NCBI RefSeq assembly: GCF_006345805.1
Contig: NW_021835271.1
Span: 1 to 53,941, forward strand
Direction of reading: 5' to 3'
Source of the DNA: Octopus sinensis
Taxonomy: Eukaryota
Length of the DNA: 53,941 nt
Both the position numbers and the translations under genes were made by a program. The notes below the pieces were generated by a model. It did no database searches, had not been told where the DNA came from, and saw only the letters and a program-made list of their open reading frames with translations. Below, piece by piece: positions 1 to 52,699 of this stretch. The stretch's first letter is position 1; every line of letters starts with the position of its first letter.

Positions 1-861
1 CGTCGATGTACAACTGTTGGCCGCTCAACAAACACGTGCCAGCCCACCCAATTCCCCTGACTTACTCCTTTACACGGATGACTCGACTAGTGAAGGCACA
101 ACCAACGGCGGCGCCGGTGTGGTGGTGCGGACACACGATGCGGTGGTCCATGAGTGGAACGCCCCGACTGGTGCTCACAGCAGCTCATTCGACTCCGAGA
201 GAGCAGCATTTAACGAAGCCCTCCGGTGGCTACTGACCTATGACAACTGGGCCTCCGCAGCTATAGTTTGCGATTGCAAATCATTGGTTGAAGCGGTAAA
301 CAACCCGTTCCCCGCAGACCCGACAATTAGAGAAGGGCAACAAACAGCAGCCCTAGTAGCAGCTGGCAAGATTTTCACGGTGATCTGGGTGCCGGGCCAT
401 TGCAACCTCTGCGGCAATGAACTCGCTGATATGCAGGCGAAACGTGGCTCGACGCTGCCAGAACCGGATGCCGCCATCGATACAGCCAGGCGATTATTCG
501 TCGAACGTTCCAGCCAACGCCAATTCAACAGCCCCGTCTGAAGGAAGTCTTCCCAAAGAAGCCGGATGAAAGAACCGAAGCAGCCTTCTCGAAGGCAGAC
601 CTCACAGACATGATATGCTTCTGTAGTGGTCGTCATCATCCGGCAGTCAGGCGGTGACAAAAGATCGCAGGACGCAGCGACACAGATCACTGCAGACTCT
701 GTAACAAGGAGGTGGAATCTGTAGAACATCTCTGGCTGAGATGTCCGACCCTGATGGTGGAACGCTATATCCGCCAACTAGGAGCTACAATGGATGCGAT
801 GATTCGTCTGCCTTCCGCGTCTCTAGCGCTCCTGAGAGTTATCCTCAGGCGCTTGAGATGA
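1..861 (+). mobile_element. 3' end of an I-group non-LTR retrotransposon (RNase H + CCHC finger), decayed
   Basis: ORF 17-541 has RNase HI motifs YTD(D)S, GAGVV, SFDSE..A, CDCKS and WVPGH..GNELAD..AK. After a frameshift, frame 1 reads CSGRHH...CRLCNKEVESVEHLWLRCP (C-x2-C-x7-H-x4-C, 691-744) and stops at 859-861, followed by a CAA tail. Confidence 0.85.
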
Positions 862-1451: not shown

Positions 1452-1960
1452 ACGAGGCCCGAAATTTTGGGGAGGTGGCGGCCAGTCGATTAGATCGACC
1501 CCAGTACGCAACGAAAAGATGAGAGGCAAAGTCAACCTCGGCGGAATTTGAACTCAGGACGTAAAGACAGACAAAATACCTATTTCTTTACTACCCACAA
1601 GGGACTAAACAGAGAGAGGACAAACAAGGACAGATAAACACATTAAGTCAATTATATCGACCCCAGTGCGTAACTGGTACTTATTTAATCGACCCCGAAA
1701 TGATGAAAGGCAAAGTCGACCTCGACGGAATTTGAACTCAGACGAAATACCTTAACAGAGAAAGGATAAACAAGGACAGAAAAACACATTAAGTCGATTA
1801 TATCGACCCCAGTGCGGAACTGGTACTTATTTAATCGACCCCTAAAGGATGAAAGACAAAGTCGACCTCGACGGAATATGAACTCAGAACGTAACGGCAG
1901 ACGAAATACTGCTACGCATTTCGCCCGGCGTGCTAACGTTTCTGCCAGCTCGCCGCCTTA
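1452..1960 (-). mobile_element. tRNA-derived SINE family A, trimeric arrangement
   Basis: Three copies of the cgacccc...ggatgaaaggcaaagtcgacctc.gcggaatttgaactcag core. The tRNA-like head (ggcgagctggcagaaacgttagcacgccgggcgaaa) is at the right end. Confidence 0.85.
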
Positions 1961-23484: not shown

Positions 23485-23722
23485 GGTGAAGACCCCCTTC
23501 GGTCATGAATGACCATGGGATTGCACCTAGAAAGTTACCCTCCTAGACAAAAGTCCGGGCAAGGTTGTTTATGGAAGACCAGCAGTCGCCCATGCATACC
23601 AGCCTCCCCTCTCCACGCCACCAGTGTTATCCAAGGGAAAGACAAAGGTCGATACAGCTTGGCACCAGTGACGTCGCAACTCATTTCTACAGCTGAGTGA
23701 ACTGGAGCAACGTGAAATAAAG
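23483..23722 (-). mobile_element. SINE fragment with an RTE-like 3' tail
   Basis: ctcagctgtagaaatgagttg body shared with 16140 and 31500. The tail ccatggtcattcatgaccgaagggg loosely resembles RTE 3' ends. Confidence 0.55.
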
Positions 23723-23731
23723 TGCTTTGCT

Positions 23732-23808
<77 letters not shown>

Positions 23809-23834
23809 CACACACATATATATATATATACACA

Positions 23835-23948
23835 TACATATACATACATACATACATACATACATACATACATACATACATACATACATACATACATACA
23901 TACATACATACATACATACATACATACATACATACATACATACATACA

Positions 23949-23978
<30 letters not shown>
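23835..23978. repeat. (ACAT)n microsatellite
   Basis: Directly visible. Confidence 0.95.
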
Positions 23979-23979
<1 letters not shown>

Positions 23980-24389
23980 GTAACGAAATTACTAAACGGA
24001 AACAACCAACAGGGAAAACGAAACTTGAAGAAAACATCAACAACGTGCCTTTTATTATTTATATATATGTGACTGGCTTCTTTCAATTTCCGCCAAACAA
24101 ATTCACTCACGAGGCCTTGGTCGGTCCCAAACTATAGTAGAAAACATTTGCTCTAGGTGCGACACGGTGGGACTGAACCCGGAACCTTGTGGCTGTGAAG
24201 GAAACTTCTTTCCACACTCCCATGCCAATATATATATATCCATACATACCTACATTTATATATATATGTGTGTGTGTGTGTGTATGAATATATATATATA
24301 TGAGGATTCTAGCTCGCTCTGATACTGAGTGGAGTTGGTGCCTTCTGGTATCTCAGAATTCAATATATAATCATTTATGATTATAGTAT

Positions 24390-24503
24390 TCTACGCTGAA
24401 GAGAAAAGAAGTTTCGGTAAGATAGAATTATTTATTATTTAATATTTAATATCTAGTTCTTATGCTTTCCTTAAAACTTGATTTCGAAACGTACGTCCGT
24501 GGA
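24390..24503 (+). ncRNA. Type I hammerhead ribozyme, copy 1 (predicted cleavage after 24497)
   Basis: Stem I UCUACG/CGUGGA; core CUGAAGA; stem II GAAA/UUUC plus AAGUUU/AAACUU; core GAAA; palindromic stem III ACGUACGU; GUC triplet. Confidence 0.9.
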
Positions 24504-24997
24504 TAACTAAAAAAATGTATGATAGATTGCAGTTAATTCATTCTCTCTTACCTGTTTGTGTCTGCCTTCCAAATGCTGTTTTTACTGAGATCTCCCTTTT
24601 TTAGTAGAAGAAATAGCTATAACCCTTTGACTGCTATTTCTAAATTCGGTATGTGGTAAGGCAACTCGTTGCTAAACCCTTATTGCTTAGTATTACTTAA
24701 ATTTTCCTCGAATGAGGCTTTTACATGCCGAAGACTACTTGGTGTAATTGATAATTTTTCCAAATTAATTAATTTCACCCTTCATTATTACGGATAACCA
24801 TATTTTATCTCAGTAGATGACCACAGCATCTTGTTTTGGCTACACGCGGGTGGGAAGGGGCTGTTGACACAATCGTTTCATTCACAAATTGAATTCGGTG
24901 ATACCAGTTGAGGATTCTAGCTCGCTCTGATACTGAGTGGAGTTGGTGCCTTCTGGTATCTCAGAATTCAATATATAATCATTTATGATTATAGTAT

Positions 24998-25110
24998 TCT
25001 ACGCTGAAGAGAAAAGAAGTTTCGGTAAGATAGAATATTTATTATTTAATATTTAATATCTAGTTCTTATGCTTTCCTTAAAACTTGATTTCGAAACGTA
25101 CGTCCGTGGA
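24998..25110 (+). ncRNA. Type I hammerhead ribozyme, copy 2 (predicted cleavage after 25104)
   Basis: Same as copy 1, with a 1-nt deletion in the apical part of stem II. Confidence 0.9.
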
Positions 25111-25604
25111 TAACTAAAAAAATGTATGATAGATTGCAGTTAATTCATTCTCTCTTACCTGTTTGTGTCTGCCTTCCAAATGCTGTTTTTACTGAGATCT
25201 CCCTTTTTTAGTAGAAGAAATAGCTATAACCCTTTGACTGCTATTTCTAAATTCGGTATGTGGTAAGGCAACTCGTTGCTAAACCCTTATTGCTTAGTAT
25301 TACTTAAATTTTCCTCGAATGAGGCTTTTACATGCCGAAGACTACTTGGTGTAATTGATAATTTTTCCAAATTAATTAATTTCACCCTTCATTATTACGG
25401 ATAACCATATTTTATCTCAGTAGATGACCACAGCATCTTGTTTTGGCTACACGCGGGTGGGAAGGGGCTGTTGACACAATCGTTTCATTCACAAATTGAA
25501 TTCGGTGATACCAGTTGAGGATTCTAGCTCGCTCTGATACTGAGTGGAGTTGGTGCCTTCTGGTATCTCAGAATTCAATATATAATCATTTATGATTATA
25601 GTAT

Positions 25605-25718
25605 TCTACGCTGAAGAGAAAAGAAGTTTCGGTAAGATAGAATTATTTATTATTTAATATTTAATATCTAGTTCTTATGCTTTCCTTAAAACTTGATTTC
25701 GAAACGTACGTCCGTGGA
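25605..25718 (+). ncRNA. Type I hammerhead ribozyme, copy 3 (predicted cleavage after 25712)
   Basis: Same as copy 1. Confidence 0.9.
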
Positions 25719-26209
25719 TAACTAAAAAAATGTATGATAGATTGCAGTTAATTCATTCTCTCTTACCTGTTTGTGTCTGCCTTCCAAATGCTGTTTTTAC
25801 TGAGATCTCCCTTTTTTAGTAGAAGAAATAGCTATAACCCTTTGACTGCTATTTCTAAATTCGGTATGTGGTAAGGCAACTCGTTGCTAAACCCTTATTG
25901 CTTAGTATTATATATATATATATGTAAACTAATAGTAGGTTATTTATGATCAACCCTCTCTCTCTCTCCCCACCACGACCATGTAGCTATTATTTTCAGT
26001 GGAGCAGGATATGTTTTGGCTCATTAATTAGTAGAAGATTCTGGTGAGCGTAAATAGGTAATTACTTGAAATAATCAAGAAAGAAAACAATATAATTGGT
26101 AGCATCAATGGAAAGAACAATTAAAACACCTTAAAATTATAATTAAAAATAAAATTAAATATAAAATAAAGAAACCGAAGAATATCATAATAACAACAAC
26201 GGTTTCAAA

Positions 26210-26370
26210 TTTTGGCACAAGGCCAGCAATTTTGGAGATGGGGTTAAATCGATTAGATCCATCACAATGCCTATCTAGTACTTATTTTATCGACCTCCGA
26301 AAGAATGAAAGACAAAGGCGACCTTTGCGGAATATGAACTCTGAACCTAGAGATTGATGAAAGGCTGCTA
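26210..26370 (-). mobile_element. SINE family A (diverged)
   Basis: cacaaggccagcaatttt...gaatgaaagacaaaggcgacc. Confidence 0.7.
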
Positions 26371-26563
26371 AGCAGCAGCAACAACTGCAGCAGCAACAAC
26401 TGCAGCAGCAGCAGCAACACTGACACCATCGAAATGTTACACCGTCAGCACCAACATCACTGTGTCATCATCATCATCATCTTTATCATCATCAAAAATA
26501 ATCATAACAACAGCATTAGAAGAAAAAAATGATAACTGCATCAACAACTAGAGCCACAATAAC

Positions 26564-26624
<61 letters not shown>

Positions 26625-26628
<4 letters not shown>

Positions 26629-27183
26629 GCCCTGATGCAGTATCAGGCAGTGGCTCTCATGGCTTCTGATCTTAACTGATTGGAAGTGTCATCATGTACA
26701 TTGTTTTGTCTTGGTATAAAAGATGGGCTACAGCAAATATTCTGCTCAATACCACAGATTTGCTTGTCAGTTGTTTGACCTTAACCAGTTGAGCATGTCC
26801 CTTAGTGGCTTACGATATGTGCATCTCTGATCACGAGCAGAAGTAGTGGGGGAGCATCATAGCCATGTGTTCAGAGGGATTCTTTGGGGTTTGAATAATT
26901 CACCTCTGGAAACATGGGTGGTCCTTTCAACATCCTTAAACAACCCTTATTCAGGGACCTTTTGAGCGGGATGGGCTACTCAACCTGAAGAAAATTCTAA
27001 CTGGGCCCCCACCTGCAAGGTCATGTGCTGTTTATCTTGATATGAGATCACCATGTCGCGCACATATGGTTGTGATGCATGTGCCTGGTGTACCCTTATC
27101 AGACGGGTAGTCATGATGGGTATATTGGGCTTCGTATATTTTACACCAGTGTCACTTTGATGGCATGCACTGCTCTCTCACTC
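26625..27183 (-). mobile_element. ~558-bp TAA-embedded element, copy 6
   Basis: Runs aaatgccctgatgcag...ctctctcactc, flanked by (AAT)n. Confidence 0.85.
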
Positions 27184-27522: not shown

Positions 27523-30242
27523 GACAGACATAATATTGCCAACAAAAGTGAAATAATCAACGAAAGACAACAAACCCAGACCGTAAGAATGTATAATGAT
27601 GAGCAAAATGCACAAAAGCAGAACACCACAGAGGAAAATGTGAACGGGAGGGAATAGGAAACAAATCTAAAACCTGGAAACAGTGAAGATGAACCTAATG
27701 ATTTTGATGCTCTAAAAAATGAGCTGAAAGCCACAGACCTCAGTATGGACCACCGAGTGTATCTCCCAAAAATTAAAATTGATAATAAAACTGCATCAAA
27801 TATGAATAGCATGAAACTGGCCGTCACAGAACTAATAGCCATATGTCAATGTCACCGAGCTAAAAGGCATAATATATGGCCGCAAAAGAAGCTGGATACT
27901 CCCTCAGACACCTCCAAACAAGAGTACCACCACCCAAACAAACCCTGTGGATAAATAATATCCAGAAAAATAGAAAACAAGAGAAAATATCTGTCAATCC
28001 TTAACGAAACTAGTAGACAATCAACACTACTAACCAACAAGAAGTGTACAAAAATACTGTGTCGATACAAAATTACAGAAAATAGTTTACCTGAGGTAAA
28101 AGCATTAGGTGAAGCAAGAGAAAACTATCCTAATTCGCAAATTCACTGAAACAGCAAACCCACAAAATTACAGACCAATAACTTGTCTCCTTACAATTTA
28201 CAAAGGCTTTACTGCAATAATATTTTTGAGAATGAGCAAGCATCTGGAAAAATACAACCTGTTTCCAGAAGAGCAGAAATATTGCAAGGGTTCATACGGT
28301 TGCAAAGATCAGCTACTGATCAATAAAGCCATAAATGAAGACAGACGCAGAAAGAAGAAGGGTCTAAGTATGCCCTGGATCGATTACCGAAAGACTTTTG
28401 ATAGTATTCCCCACACATCGATCCTAGAAACACTAGTCATAAACAAGGTAGCACAAATATTCATAAAATATATAGCACATTCCATGAATAAATAGCAGAC
28501 AGTGTTACAGCACCAGAGAAAAGAGGAACTCATTAAAAACAAAGCCATCCCCATTAAAAGAAGAATATTCCAGGGAGACACATACTCCCTATTCCTTTTC
28601 TGCTTGGTACGGACACCCTTATCTGACATGCTAAACGGAACTGGATATGAAGACAACTGTTACGGCAAAACAATCAGCCACTTCTTATATATGGATGAGC
28701 TAAAACTGTATACTACACATGATAAACAGCTGGAAACGTTACTACAGACAGTACATGGATTTACCAAATAAATAAATATGAAATTTGACTGAGAAAAATG
28801 TGCCAAAGCAACATTGAAAAGAGGAAAACTAACTAAGAGTAACAACATCACACTAGATAAAGCAAATGAAATAAGGGAATTAGACCAAAGCCAGGCATAC
28901 AAATATTTAGGAATCAATGAACTTGATACGATACAACATACACAAATGAAAGAGAAAATAAAAAAAAAGAATACTATAGACGAGTTAGATTAATACTGAA
29001 AACAGAGCTCAATGCGAAAAACAATATAATAGGAATCAACACTCTAGCTGTCCTAGTTATTAGTTACAGCTACAATATTCTTGACTGGACACTAAATGAA
29101 CTAACCAAAATAGACAGGAAAACAAGAAAAATAATGACAGGATCTAGGATGCACCACCCAAAATCTGACATAGAAACGTTATATATACAACATATAGAAG
29201 GTGGTAGCGGCCTTATACATCTAGACAACTATTACAAAATAACCACCATAGAACTACAAGAACACCTGCTTCAGAAGCAAGGAAAACTAATACAAATAGC
29301 CGCATAAAACGAATAAAAACTGTTTTGTCTTTAAGGAAACTTACAAATACAAAAAAAGTAGTCATAGTACCTAATAACTACGAAGAAAATGAAGAAACAA
29401 GAAATGCTGTAAAACAACTGAAGTCGAAACTAAAACTGGAACAGCAACGGATCATGATAAAACGATGGCAAGAAAAGCCCCTTCATGGCAAATACTGGAC
29501 TAAACTAAATGCAAAAGAAATAGACAAAGAAAAATCCCAACAATGGTTGTGAAGCTCAGGGCTCAAAGCAGAAACGGAAGGATTTTTAATTTCAGCACAA
29601 GACCAAAGCCTCCCCACAAGAACTTACTGTGAACATACAATGAAACGAAACATAACAAGTGACTGCAGAATATTTGGAGATGGACAAGAACCAATACACC
29701 ATATTATCTCTGGCTGCCTAGTCCTGATTAAAAACGAATATATACACTGACACAACAGAGTTGGGACCTATATATACACTCGAAGCTATGCCAACACTAT
29801 GGAATATCAACAGAAAGTAGATGGTATAGGCACACACCAGAATAGCTTACAGAAAATGAGAAGGTATCCATACTATGGGATATGTCAATACACACAGGTA
29901 CAGAAATTAAGGCCAAAATGCCGGATATAGTTGCCAGAGATCATCAAGAAAACAAATGCTTTGTAATCGATGGAGAAACTTTCAAAATACAAAAACCTGG
30001 AAATAGAAGTAACTCGAATATGGAGTCTGAAAACAGAAACAATTCTCATTATAGTTGGTGCATTAAGTACGAAAAAGAAAAACAATACATAAAAACACCA
30101 GTACTAACAAGTATATATAACGTAAAACACTTTCAATACAGTAAAAATAAGAGCATCACAACAAACCATAGCACATACCCAAGGAACAGAGCTGTGCTCG
30201 GTAGTCCAGTGAAAACATGTGATAAATATTAGACTATTGAAT
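27520..30242 (+). mobile_element. R4/Dong-clade RLE non-LTR retrotransposon, 5'-truncated and decayed
   Basis: RT motifs NYRPITCL, IDYRKTFDSIPH, IFQGD, HFLYMDELKLY and YKYLG. C-terminal CRIFG..EPIHHIISGC..HNRVG and PDIV (RLE). Ends in (TAA)n at 30243 and begins in (TAA)n. Confidence 0.88.
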
Positions 30243-43964: not shown

Positions 43965-44545
43965 GTACCTGCCATAAATACAGAGGTAAAGATTGAAATA
44001 CATACATAGAAACAGGATGAACACATGAGACAAGGCTGACAAATATCAAGGAATGATGTTTGTAGAGACCACAGCCCATGGAGAACTAGCTCGAAGATTT
44101 AGGAAAGCTCTGAAGAAGACCAAGCTCAGCATTAAGATCGCTGAAAAGCCAGGAAGCTTCATCAGATCACAGTTTTGTAGGACACACCCCTTTGAGAATA
44201 CCGCATGCACCAATGAAAGCTGTATGGTATGTAAGATTAACCTGGGTTTTAACTGTAGAACTAGAAATTTAATCTACAGCATAAGGTGCATAGAGGCTGC
44301 TTGTAAAGACAAGAACTTGGCATACATTGGTGAGAAATCTAGAAGCATTGCAGAGAGGTTAAATGACTATTTGAGACAGTCCTCCATACTCTACTAACAT
44401 GCCAAACATCGGCATCGAAGTACACTGGGTCGACTTGACAACCGGGTTTTATCCAAGCACCCAGAAGACCCAACGCTCAGACAAATACAAGAGCATGTCC
44501 TCATAAATGAAACATTCCCCGTAGTAAATGTGAGTTACACATAGA
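43965..44545 (+). mobile_element. Penelope-like element fragment (Neptune-type linker + GIY-YIG)
   Basis: MFVETTAHGELARR, the Cys-rich linker CTNESCMVC...C, and LIYSIRC...YIGEKSRSIAERL. Confidence 0.8.
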
Positions 44546-50759: not shown

Positions 50760-51514
50760 TCACTCCGATTACGGAGTTAAATTTAGGGCTTATAAATCTA
50801 ATATTCTCCTATCCTTCCTTAATACTGGTTCCCATATGCTGCTCCTATCTGCACTCGGTCTGCTTAGGAGGTTGTTGTATCCTACCATATGTACTGCTTC
50901 TTTTAGTTTTCGTATTTTCCAGTAGTGTTCTCTGTCTGTTATTTTAACTTCATCCCACAGGGGGAGCTGGTCTCCATTTTCCCCCACATGATCAGCTATG
51001 GCCGATTCATCAATATCTCCTCGTGTCACAGCTTTGCGATGTTCGTCTACCCTTATTTTGAAGGGGCAGCATGTTTCTCCTTTGTATAACCTACCACAAC
51101 TGAAATTGGTCATATTTTCTTCTATTGGTGGTTCTCCTCGAAGGAGATATTTACGAAGTGTTGTATTACTCTTGAATACTATCCAGATGTCATATGGGCC
51201 GAATATCTTTTGTATCTTTTCGGAGAGGCATTTCACATAGGGTAGACAGACTGTGGACAGTTTACTGGCCTCATCCTCTCTCTTTTCCCTAATTGGAGTG
51301 GATAGCATACTTTGTGGGTAGTTGTTACTTAATAGATTGTTATTGAGCTCGATCATTTCTTCGTGGCGTTATCACGATCGCTACTTATATTCTTTGCTCA
51401 ATGTTTTATGCACTGAGCAATCCCTCTCTTTACACTGAATGGATGGTGGGAATTGAAGTTGAAGTATCATCCAGTAAAGGTCGGCTTGCGGTATACAGAT
51501 GTCTTGAATCCATA

Positions 51515-51747
51515 TAAGGCGGCGAGCTGGCAGAAACGTTAGCACGCCGGGCGAAATGCTTAGCGGTACTTCGTCTGCTTTACGTTGTGAGTTCAAATTC
51601 CGCTGAGGTCGACTTTGCCTTTCATCCTTTCGGGGTCGATAAATTAAGTACCAGTGACGCACTGGGGTCGATGTAATCGACTTAATATCTATGTCTGTCC
51701 TTGTTTGTCCGCTCTGTGTTTAGCCCCTTGTGGGTAATAAAGAAATA
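51515..51747 (+). mobile_element. Monomeric SINE family A inserted in the PLE, 25-bp TSD
   Basis: ggtatacagatgtcttgaatccata occurs at 51490-51514 and 51748-51772. Confidence 0.92.
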
Positions 51748-52699
51748 GGTATACAGATGTCTTGAATCCATACTTGGTGCGTGGTATTAATACGTCTAGG
51801 AATGCCAGCAGATTGTCTTTTTCCTTTTCCATTGTGAACTGTATGGATAGCTTTATTGAGTTCACATGATCTAACAGCACTTGGACATTTTCCTGGTGGG
51901 GCCAGAGTAGCCATATTGTTGGTTTTAGTGGTGTTGATCCTAAAGCCAAATTCTCAAAGTATTCCATGTATATATTGGCTATTACCGGTGATAATGGCGA
52001 ACCTGTCCTAACCCTCCTCTTGTCAATATATATCAATGTCCATACTGAAGTAGGTAGTTTCTACACAGGTCAACATTTCCATCAAGTTTTTTATTGGTAT
52101 ACTAGTGCGTTCGTTTAGATGGGTGTCTGTCACTAGTTTTTCTTGTATCACCGATAGTGCTTCACCATTTGGGACTTTGGTGAACAGGCTTATCACATCT
52201 AGACTCACCCTCTGGTTGGATTCAATGGGAGTATCCTTGATCAATTCTGTGAAGTGGGTGGAATTCTTCACGTACGATGTTGACTGTCCTGCTAATGGAC
52301 GGATTATATCCACAAGGAAGCGGCTCAGTGGATTACATGCTGAACCTCTACAGCTCACTATAGGTCTTAACGGAATACCATCCTTGTGAATCTTAGGGAG
52401 ACCGTACATGTGTGGTTGTTGATTGTAGTGTTGAGTCAGTTGTCTGTACTTCATTGGTGTAAAGTGATCCTTGTTCTTGATCAAGATCTGTGACAACTTC
52501 CTCTCTGTTTTCAAAGTTGGGTCTTTCTTTTCTTTGCTGTAGCTTCCATCACTTATAACACTTGCCAACTTTTCAGAGTAGGCAGACTTGTTCATCAGCA
52601 CTGTAGCATTTTCTTTGTCTGCTGGAAGTATTATGTAACTGTTAATTGCGTAAAATTTTCTCAGTGTGGTGGCGGCGTTGGTGAAATAAACCAATTAAT

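What the first reader, a model, noticed from the sequence alone, without database searches (positions are those of the whole stretch)
24301..25910. Tandem array of 608-bp units, each with an intact hammerhead: a large retrozyme-like circular-RNA element
Seen: 2.65 near-identical head-to-tail units with no ORF of 60 aa or more. Each has a full type I hammerhead: 6-bp stem I, CUGAAGA, G10.1-C11.1, GAAA, palindromic ACGUACGU stem III and a GUC triplet. Cleavage after 24497, 25104 and 25712 would release monomers of 607 and 608 nt. Established: animal non-LTR retrozymes are tandem hammerhead repeats expressed as linear and circular monomers, thought to use PLE enzymes, and hammerheads with palindromic stem III can act as dimers. 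From memory, described animal examples are mostly about 170-400 nt. Inference: this is an unusually large, recently active cephalopod retrozyme family, and I do not know of a description of it.
Basis: partly seen in the sequence, partly recalled or inferred. Interest (0 to 1): 0.92.

Follow-up and report, generated by a model that had tools for sequence, protein, structure and literature searches.

The report
Octopus tandem hammerhead retrozyme array
A 1.6-kb stretch of an octopus genome is 2.65 nearly identical head-to-tail copies of a 608-base non-coding unit, each with a complete self-cutting "hammerhead" RNA motif; this fits a known class of mobile elements (retrozymes) thought to spread through small RNA circles, so it is a new example, not a new kind.

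Summary
Window 24301-25910 is 2.65 head-to-tail units of 608, 607 and 395 nt. They are identical except for one 1-nt indel, and no reading frame exceeds 51 codons. Each unit has a complete type I hammerhead on the + strand: 6-bp helix I, CUGAAGA, G10.1-C11.1, GAAA, ACGUACGU helix III and GUC. These are the only three such motifs in the 54-kb window, and chance expects about 0.0003-0.002 per window. Rfam's Hammerhead_1 model aligns end to end with the same boundaries, but scores only 17 bits against a threshold of 34, because helix II carries an 83-nt arm. The helix geometry (6 bp / 4 bp / 2 bp plus 4-nt palindromic loop) equals that of the experimentally validated mussel retrozyme hammerhead. 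The array interrupts an (AT)13 microsatellite, a target type reported for Penelope-like elements (PLEs). The genome is Octopus, and a decayed PLE lies in the same window.

Best reading: one young insertion of a non-LTR retrozyme, meaning a non-autonomous element mobilised by PLE enzymes. "Unusually large" is not supported, since a 2026 preprint reports 51-972 bp. Copy number, expression, circularity and cleavage could not be tested, and no second copy was found. It is a new member of a known kind, of moderate interest.

The parts
24301..25910 (+). Whole array: 2.65 head-to-tail units (one insertion)
   Evidence: Direct repeats with 607/608-nt spacing. The units are identical except for one indel.
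24301..24908 (+). Unit 1 (608 nt)
   Evidence: alignment.
24909..25515 (+). Unit 2 (607 nt; lacks one T in the distal helix II arm)
   Evidence: the only difference is at unit position 128.
25516..25910 (+). Unit 3, partial (395 nt), still containing a complete hammerhead
24390..24503 (+). Hammerhead 1 (type I). Helix I strands are 24390-24395 and 24498-24503. CUGAAGA is 24396-24402. Helix II plus its arm is 24403-24485. GAAA is 24486-24489. The helix III palindrome ACGUACGU is 24489-24496. C17 is 24497, with predicted cleavage after it.
   Evidence: Sequence, descriptor hit, Rfam RF00163 full-length alignment at 16.9 bits.
24998..25110 (+). Hammerhead 2; predicted cleavage after 25104
   Evidence: Rfam RF00163 at 17.1 bits.
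25605..25718 (+). Hammerhead 3; predicted cleavage after 25712
24403..24485 (+). Helix II: a 4-bp base (G-C and three A-U pairs), then an A.A/G.G internal loop, then a long imperfect hairpin arm. The total is 83 nt, against 13-14 nt in validated retrozyme hammerheads.
   Evidence: The arm alone folds to -16.2 kcal/mol. Comparison with the coral, mussel and axolotl constructs.
24498..25104 (+). Predicted 607-nt monomer RNA between two cleavage sites
   Evidence: Linear MFE -166.8 kcal/mol, z = -5.0. Circular MFE -159.9 kcal/mol with 65% of bases paired. Both folds keep helices I and II.
24885..24977 (+). Strong hairpin inside the unit that spans the unit junction. The 5' edge of the array falls inside it.
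   Evidence: MFE structure. Weak non-specific miRNA-like CM match at 14.9 bits.
24288..24300 (.). Left half of the interrupted (AT)n microsatellite (target site)
   Evidence: Excising 24301-25910 restores an uninterrupted 26-nt (AT)13 tract.
25911..25923 (.). Right half of the interrupted (AT)n microsatellite (target site)

Best explanation
The array is one young insertion of a non-coding, hammerhead-bearing retroelement of the metazoan non-LTR retrozyme type, that is, a non-autonomous element mobilised by Penelope-like-element (PLE) enzymes, in an Octopus genome.

Proposed cycle:
1. The + strand of a tandem copy is transcribed into a multimeric RNA.
2. Each type I hammerhead cuts after GUC. 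It may act alone, or more efficiently as a double hammerhead in which the ACGUACGU stretches of two neighbouring units pair into an 8-bp helix III. [quoted passage not shown]
3. A host tRNA-type ligase closes them into highly base-paired circles.
4. A PLE reverse transcriptase, primed at a nick made by its GIY-YIG endonuclease in a (TA)n microsatellite, copies the circle for more than one lap. This yields a head-to-tail cDNA array whose ends fall at arbitrary phases of the unit.

Shown here: the array, its near-identity, the intact hammerhead core and helices, the strong predicted structure, the (AT)n target, the octopus host, and a PLE remnant in the window.

Inferred from the literature on retrozymes: transcription, cleavage, ligation, circularity and the use of PLE enzymes.
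For: (1) The array is 2.65 units, identical but for one indel, and non-coding.

(2) Every hammerhead position required is present in all three copies. These are the only hits in the window, and the chance rate is 0.0003-0.002 per window.

(3) Rfam Hammerhead_1 aligns over its whole model with the same boundaries and is the top ribozyme match.

(4) The geometry is helix I 6 bp, helix II 4 bp, helix III 2 bp plus a 4-nt palindromic loop. The same descriptor recovers exactly this geometry from the validated mussel Mg353 retrozyme, and a nearly identical one from coral Amil224 (supplement of PMC7229834). PMC4209133 gives it as the canonical metazoan type I design.

(5) Two copies co-fold into a double hammerhead with an 8-bp helix III, at -53.8 kcal/mol against 2 x -20.7.

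(6) The monomer is much more structured than shuffled controls: z = -5.0 linear and -3.6 circular, with 65% of bases paired. Its MFE fold keeps helices I and II. Retrozyme circles are described as highly self-paired (PMC7229834, PMC7761336).

(7) GC is 34.7%, which fits the '<45-50%' reported for animal retrozymes.

(8) The array ends are out of phase with the cleavage site, 197 nt before the first and 198 nt after the last. Removing the array restores an (AT)13 tract, while only 3.1% of window positions lie in such tracts. (TA)n is a reported preferred target of PLEs, and multicopy head-to-tail insertions are typical of PLEs and their non-autonomous derivatives (PMC8557442).

(9) The genome is Octopus and carries PLEs. 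A frameshifted ORF remnant, read as RT plus GIY-YIG mainly by eye, lies at about 50.8-52.7 kb on the - strand.

(10) The array meets the operational definition of an 'active' retrozyme in the 2026 preprint: a tandem repeat with at least 2 consecutive units carrying complete HHRs with MFE below -5 kcal/mol. Here there are 3 HHRs at -20.7 kcal/mol.
Against: - The Rfam score (about 17 bits) is half the gathering threshold, and the motif was not reported in the whole-window scans.
- Helix II is 83 nt, against 13-14 nt in the four validated retrozyme hammerheads I could examine. Its 4-bp base is mostly A-U.
- Whether the internal loops can replace the loop 1-loop 2 tertiary contact needed for fast cleavage is unknown.
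- No second copy of the unit was found. Sources searched: the rest of the window, JGI metagenome and IMG/VR contigs, the 5.8-billion-protein collection queried with all unit reading frames, and 104 kb around related octopus PLE copies. There is therefore no covariation, no copy number and no link to a particular autonomous PLE.
- The PLE remnant in the window and its relatives show no hammerhead and no similarity to the unit.
- There is no expression evidence.
- (TA)n tracts are common in this genome, so the target-site argument is only about 30-fold.
Confidence: 0.68

Rival explanations
1. It is a non-autonomous PLE-type insertion, but no circular RNA is involved. The partial tandem arose the way PLE pseudo-LTRs do, by template switching or re-initiation on a linear or multimeric transcript during target-primed reverse transcription. 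The hammerhead only trims transcripts or is a passenger.
For: PLEs and their non-autonomous derivatives routinely insert as partial tandems and multicopy head-to-tail arrays, with a microsatellite target bias (PMC8557442). The same paper notes that hammerheads are dispensable for PLE proliferation and may 'simply parasitize PLEs'. The array sits in (AT)13 and a PLE remnant is in the window.
Against: The unit closes on itself exactly (period 607/608), with no unique 5' or 3' part. The array ends bear no relation to the hammerhead cleavage site or to a fixed 3' end. This is what rolling-circle copying predicts. The intact hammerheads and the strongly structured monomer match elements shown experimentally to make circles in mussel, coral and axolotl (PMC7229834).
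Confidence: 0.2
2. It is an ordinary local tandem duplication or minisatellite whose unit happens to contain a hammerhead-like string. There is no ribozyme and no retrotransposition.
For: Only one locus was seen. The Rfam score is below threshold. Hammerhead descriptors that allow long helix II inserts do give chance hits at genome scale, about 0.002 per 54 kb with the relaxed setting.
Against: The chance of the strict motif in a given 608-nt unit is about 4e-6, and none of the chance hits in 3000 random windows had a palindromic helix III. The geometry equals that of the validated mussel retrozyme ribozyme. The clean interruption of a microsatellite points to an insertion rather than an in-place duplication. 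The monomer fold has z = -5.
Confidence: 0.05
3. The copy number, or the tandem arrangement itself, is an assembly artefact: one unit collapsed or expanded by the assembler.
For: The units are identical, and PLE-type tandem and inverted structures are known to trouble assemblies (PMC8557442). Reads were not available.
Against: The units differ by a 1-nt indel, so they are not the same sequence laid down repeatedly. Both junctions with unique flanks are clean. Even a single unit plus a partial one would keep the hammerhead and the insertion.
Confidence: 0.07

Closest known systems
Metazoan non-LTR retrozymes (Cervera & de la Pena 2020, PMC7229834), in particular the Mytilus galloprovincialis Mg353 element
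   Same: Both are head-to-tail non-coding repeats of low GC. Each has one type I hammerhead per unit with helix I 6 bp, helix II 4 bp, and helix III 2 bp plus a 4-nt palindromic loop. The helix III strings are ACGCGCGU in mussel and ACGUACGU here, and both have GUC at the cleavage site. Both monomers are predicted to be highly self-paired, and both hosts are molluscs with PLEs in the genome.
   Different: The unit is 608 nt against 353 nt (the 2020 range is ~170-400 nt). Helix II carries a ~75-nt extra arm in place of a 5-nt loop 2. There is no sequence similarity outside the ribozyme core. Expression, circles and cleavage were shown for the mussel and not for this element. Only one locus is known here, against about 5000 hammerheads in the mussel genome.
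[quoted passage not shown]
   Same: The array meets their operational definition: a tandem repeat with at least 2 consecutive complete HHRs with MFE below -5 kcal/mol. Its size lies inside their 51-972 bp range, and most of their families also have few units per array (up to 7 in 75% of families).
   Different: Their survey covered vertebrates, three insects and one coral, and no mollusc. Their link to PLE pseudo-LTRs rests on sequence similarity, which I could not find for this unit.
[quoted passage not shown]
   Same: Both are type I topology and occur in tandem arrangements. Both are predicted to act as dimers through a palindromic helix III region, and both are associated with retroelements that target microsatellites.
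   Different: PLE min-HHRs usually lack helix III and have a shorter helix I (4-5 bp) and a longer continuous helix II (7-8 bp). They flank an RT/GIY-YIG ORF. This element has the canonical 6/4/2 geometry and no ORF.
Classical hammerhead satellites (newt satellite 2, Schistosoma Sm-alpha, cave-cricket pDo500), as summarised in PMC6155905
   Same: Tandem DNA repeats of a few hundred bp, transcribed, carrying type I hammerheads with a weak helix III that cleave better as dimers.
   Different: Those are very high-copy satellites. Here only a 2.65-unit array is documented, and it looks like a discrete insertion.
Plant LTR retrozymes (PMC4918200)
   Same: Similar RNA size (600-1000 nt), non-coding, hammerhead-processed, and proposed to move through circular RNA intermediates.
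   Different: The plant elements have type III hammerheads inside LTRs, a PBS and PPT, GC above 55%, 4-bp TSDs and Gypsy-type helpers. None of these applies here.

Membership tests
Hammerhead ribozyme, type I (Rfam RF00163) | Conserved core: C3 U4 G5 A6 N7 G8 A9, G12 A13 A14, A15.1-U16.1, H17 | tested here: met
   CUGAAGA, GAAA, A15.1...U16.1 and C17 are read directly in all three copies.
Hammerhead ribozyme, type I (Rfam RF00163) | Three helices around the core, with helix I open (type I topology) | tested here: met
   Helix I is 6 bp and open. Helix II is closed (4 bp, internal loop, then arm). Helix III is 2 bp plus a GUAC loop. The MFE folds keep helices I and II.
Hammerhead ribozyme, type I (Rfam RF00163) | Score at or above Rfam's gathering threshold (34 bits) | tested here: not met
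   16.9 and 17.1 bits over the full-length model 1-45. The model expects about 10 nt where this RNA has 79. Nothing was reported in the window-wide scans.
Hammerhead ribozyme, type I (Rfam RF00163) | Loop 1-loop 2 tertiary contact (helix I 6 bp and helix II 4 bp before the loops) | tested here: inconclusive
   The 6-bp and 4-bp spacing is met, and internal loops follow both helices. Whether those loops make the contact cannot be judged from one sequence.
Hammerhead ribozyme, type I (Rfam RF00163) | Site-specific self-cleavage after H17 | not testable with these tools
   Needs in vitro transcription of a monomer and a dimer.
Hammerhead ribozyme, type I (Rfam RF00163) | Covariation that supports the helices across homologues | tested here: inconclusive
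   The three copies are identical in the motif apart from one indel in the distal arm. No other homologue was found.
Metazoan non-LTR retrozyme | Head-to-tail tandem repeats, at least 2 consecutive units each with a complete type I HHR (2026 preprint criterion) | tested here: met
   2.65 units and 3 complete HHRs. The HHR MFE is -20.7 kcal/mol.
Metazoan non-LTR retrozyme | Non-coding | tested here: met
   The longest frame is 51 codons. No protein in 5.8 billion matches any frame.
Metazoan non-LTR retrozyme | Low GC (below 45-50%) | tested here: met
   34.7%.
Metazoan non-LTR retrozyme | No LTRs; no PBS or PPT | tested here: inconclusive
   The only long direct repeats are the units themselves, and the flanks are (AT)n. 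No tRNA-like sequence was found. PBS and PPT motifs were not searched for explicitly.
Metazoan non-LTR retrozyme | Unit size within the described range | tested here: met
   608 nt is above the ~170-400 nt of PMC7229834 but inside the 51-972 bp of 10.64898/2026.07.22.740005.
Metazoan non-LTR retrozyme | Dispersed multi-copy family in the genome | tested here: inconclusive
   No other copy is in the window or in 104 kb of other octopus loci. No cephalopod genome could be searched by DNA.
Metazoan non-LTR retrozyme | Co-existence with autonomous PLEs in the same genome | tested here: met
   A decayed ORF remnant read as RT plus GIY-YIG lies at about 50793-52694 on the - strand. It has Octopus sinensis and O. 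vulgaris homologues at 55-78% identity. The Pfam support is weak.
Metazoan non-LTR retrozyme | Expressed as linear and covalently circular monomer RNAs | not testable with these tools
   No transcriptome data could be reached.
Autonomous Penelope-like element | ORF encoding RT and GIY-YIG endonuclease between pseudo-LTRs | tested here: not met
   There is no ORF in the unit. The element can at most be a non-autonomous derivative.
Autonomous Penelope-like element | Insertion as a partial tandem into a microsatellite target | tested here: met
   The 2.65-unit array splits an (AT)13 tract. This behaviour is described for PLEs in PMC8557442.

The most novel reading that the evidence does not exclude
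This may be the first recognised cephalopod retrozyme lineage. Its hammerhead keeps the canonical 6/4/2 geometry but carries a ~75-nt arm in helix II, which hides it from Rfam's threshold and possibly from standard short-loop HHR descriptors. If so, interrupted hammerheads and the retrozymes built on them may be systematically under-counted in animal genomes. The clean, phase-arbitrary array inside an (AT)13 tract would also be a fresh footprint of rolling-circle reverse transcription primed by a PLE GIY-YIG endonuclease, which bears on the open question of who mobilises animal retrozymes.
Probability: 0.3. Interest if true: 0.55.

Novelty: new member of a known kind. Interest (0 to 1): 0.4.

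Why it matters
Retrozymes are the only known genome-encoded source of abundant, ribozyme-processed circular RNAs in animals. Which enzymes mobilise them is still argued from co-occurrence and pseudo-LTR similarity.

A young octopus array with intact ribozymes and sharp junctions in a (TA)n tract would be a convenient test object. It predicts a ~608-nt circle that can be sought in octopus RNA. It gives an insertion footprint that matches PLE endonuclease preference. Its long helix II arm also tests how much insertion a natural type I hammerhead tolerates.

It also shows that threshold-based ribozyme annotation can miss such elements: Rfam reported nothing for the 54-kb window. If the element turns out to be a single local copy with an inactive motif, it is just one more repeat in a repeat-rich genome.

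Tried and rejected
Searches for other copies, all negative:
- blastn of the unit against the rest of the window found only 12-26-nt matches.
- Exact-pattern scans of JGI metagenome contigs with two different 21-mers found nothing. One scan of IMG/VR found nothing.
- Protein-word searches found nothing: one with the longest + strand frame and one with 20 further unit frames joined by X spacers.
- blastn and hammerhead scans of six loci (104 kb) fetched around octopus PLE relatives, L001-L006, found nothing.

Attempts to recover the window's own or an orthologous locus through flanking ORFs failed, because those ORFs are not on record.

Searches for a second ribozyme or the opposite polarity were negative. 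There is no hammerhead on the - strand, and no other Rfam ribozyme at E <= 5 in one unit.

Looking for an autonomous partner in the window also gave nothing. The decayed PLE at 50.8-52.7 kb has no canonical or minimal hammerhead and no similarity to the unit.

Ideas rejected:
- tRNA-derived SINE: ARAGORN finds nothing.
- miRNA or sRNA hits in the region: these are low-complexity (TA)n/(TG)n artefacts far below their thresholds.

Other negatives:
- Similarity of the unit to the mussel or coral retrozymes beyond the core: none.
- A literature search for the exact core strings found only unrelated primers.
Full report
**1. The observation**

The sequence at 24301-25910 is a head-to-tail array. 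Direct-repeat families with start-to-start spacings of 607 and 608 nt cover it. TRF did not list it only because its longest period is 500.

Cutting the array into units gives 608, 607 and 395 nt, or 2.65 units. In a MAFFT alignment the only difference is one T at unit position 128, and there are no substitutions. GC is 34.7% against 38.0% for the window. No frame of the circularised unit exceeds 51 codons.

**2. The hammerhead**

Read from the sequence, each unit has UCUACG / CUGAAGA / G...C closing an 83-nt (82-nt in unit 2) helix II / GAAA / CGUACGU / C, followed by CGUGGA. This gives:
- a 6-bp helix I with one G.U pair;
- the full C3-A9 and G12-A14 core;
- G10.1-C11.1 and A15.1-U16.1;
- a 2-bp helix III closed by the palindromic loop GUAC, which together read ACGUACGU;
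- C17.

A descriptor I wrote required helix I >=5 bp, helix II >=3 bp with up to 130 nt, helix III >=2 bp, U16.1 and H17. It finds exactly these three sites on both strands of the 54-kb window. In 3000 random windows with the same dinucleotide transitions it found:
- 0.0023 hits per window;
- 0.0003 per window when helix I >=6 and helix II >=4 were required;
- none with a palindromic helix III.

As a positive control, the same descriptor recovers the experimentally validated hammerheads of the coral Amil224 and mussel Mg353 retrozymes. Their sequences come from the supplement of PMC7229834. The mussel motif has exactly the octopus geometry: I 6, II 4, III 2 plus a 4-nt loop, with ACGCGCGU where the octopus has ACGUACGU.

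Rfam gave nothing at gathering thresholds for the whole window, and no hammerhead at E <= 10 for 24200-26000. When only the motif or one unit was searched, Hammerhead_1 (RF00163) aligned over its full model with my boundaries. The scores were 16.9 and 17.1 bits against a gathering score of 34. The shortfall sits at the 79-nt insert, where the model expects about 10 nt.

The motif is therefore real in sequence and beyond chance. It is sub-threshold by Rfam's criterion, and its activity is untested.

**3. Structure**

- The 114-nt motif folds with helices I and II in the MFE at -20.7 kcal/mol. The helix II arm alone folds as a long imperfect hairpin at -16.2 kcal/mol.
- Two copies co-fold into the classical double hammerhead, with an 8-bp intermolecular helix III. 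The energy is -53.8 kcal/mol against -41.4 for two separate monomers.
- The 607-nt monomer has an MFE of -166.8 kcal/mol, with z = -5.0 against dinucleotide shuffles.
- As a circle the monomer has an MFE of -159.9 kcal/mol, 65% of bases paired and z of about -3.6.
- Both monomer folds retain helices I and II.
- No second ribozyme of any Rfam class and no hammerhead of the opposite polarity was found.

**4. Context**

Removing 24301-25910 restores an uninterrupted 26-nt (AT)13 tract. Only 3.1% of window positions lie in (TA)>=5 tracts. The array ends lie 197 nt before the first and 198 nt after the last cleavage site, so they are unrelated to the ends of the RNA monomer.

The window comes from an octopus. 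An ORF at 50793-51368 on the - strand has 14 homologues, including proteins of Octopus sinensis and O. vulgaris, and the fetched loci are chromosomes of those species. I read that ORF, together with 51692-52060 and 52026-52694 on the - strand, as a frameshifted Penelope-like element with RT followed by GIY-YIG. This reading rests mainly on motifs seen by eye and on the PF00078 and PF26215 labels of the homologues. Direct Pfam support is weak.

That remnant has no hammerhead and no similarity to the unit.

**5. What it most likely is**

All sequence-level features match the metazoan non-LTR retrozymes: non-coding, low-GC tandem repeats with one type I hammerhead per unit. These elements are expressed as linear and circular monomers and are thought to be copied by PLE enzymes (PMC7229834, PMC7761336).

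PLEs and their non-autonomous derivatives insert as partial tandems and multicopy head-to-tail arrays, and they favour microsatellites, with (TA)n named explicitly (PMC8557442). A 2026 preprint argues from pseudo-LTR similarity that animal retrozymes are non-autonomous PLE derivatives. It defines an 'active' retrozyme as a tandem repeat with at least two consecutive complete HHRs, and this array qualifies.

The phase-arbitrary ends and the exact circular closure of the unit are what rolling-circle reverse transcription of a circular monomer predicts. This step is inference. A linear multimeric template with PLE-style template switching is the main rival.

**6. What is not supported**

'Unusually large' is true against the ~170-400 nt of the 2020 paper. 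It is not true against the 51-972 bp range (mean 650 bp in ray-finned fishes) of the 2026 preprint.

'Recently active family' is only half shown. Zero substitutions among the units mean the array is young, unless it has been homogenised. I could not find a second copy anywhere, because no cephalopod genome or transcriptome can be searched by DNA with these tools.

The unusual feature is the 83-nt helix II, against 13-14 nt in the four validated constructs. It keeps the canonical 4-bp base followed by an internal loop. Whether it keeps fast cleavage is open.

**7. Novelty and score**

The held literature has no paper linking retrozymes or hammerheads with octopus or cephalopods beyond incidental mentions. 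The 2020 supplement does not list them. Repbase and Dfam could not be consulted.

I rate the finding a new member of a known kind. It is a plausible first cephalopod retrozyme with a long-armed hammerhead variant. It is useful as a test object but not surprising, given that retrozymes are already known from other molluscs. Interest is 0.4.

Noticed in passing
window 50793-52694 (- strand): Decayed Penelope-like element. I read RT-like frames at 52694-52026 and 52060-51692, and a GIY-YIG-like C-terminal frame at 51368-50793. They are split by frameshifts and an apparent insertion or deletion. The homologues are Octopus sinensis and O. vulgaris proteins at 55-78% identity. It has no hammerhead and no similarity to the 608-nt unit.
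   Followed up: partly
window 44053-44397 (+): A 114-aa ORF with a weak GIY-YIG match (PF01541, E 0.002, below cutoff). It may be a second PLE fragment.
   Followed up: no
window 17-541 (+) and 28109-28495 (+): Retroelement fragments: an RNase H ORF (PF00075, E 1.3e-10) at the window start, and a reverse-transcriptase fragment (RVT_1, E 4e-8) 2.2 kb downstream of the array.
   Followed up: no
window 24100-24225; 26200-26300; also 18428, 38347, 39000, 3060: Two interspersed, SINE-like repeat families flank the array. The motif TTTGGCACAAGGCCAGCAATTT occurs 4 times and GGTGGGACTGAACCCGGAACC twice in the window, against 0 expected. ARAGORN calls no tRNA in the stretch scanned (23500-26800).
   Followed up: partly
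window 1608-1888: A 146-bp unit repeated 1.9 times at 93% identity. By eye it contains the ATCGACCCC...ACTGGTACTTATTT motif that recurs in the window's interspersed repeats.
   Followed up: no
whole window: Very high microsatellite load: 148 TRF rows, including (TA)n tracts of several hundred bp and (TAGA)n, (ACAT)n, (AAC)n and (CTT)n. These tracts produce spurious long ORFs and spurious miRNA-family hits.
   Followed up: no
window 24885-24977 (and 25492-25584): A strong ~90-nt hairpin inside the unit (GAAUUCGGUGAUACCAG...CUGGUAUCUCAGAAUUC) spans the unit junction. The 5' end of the array falls inside it. Its role is unknown.
   Followed up: no
loci L002, L003, L005 (ENA ERZ21867824 contigs): An ENA long-contig assembly holds PLE copies only about 67-69% identical at the DNA level to the window's PLE. 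It presumably comes from a more distant relative. It could not be searched by DNA for the retrozyme beyond the 20-kb stretches fetched.
   Followed up: partly
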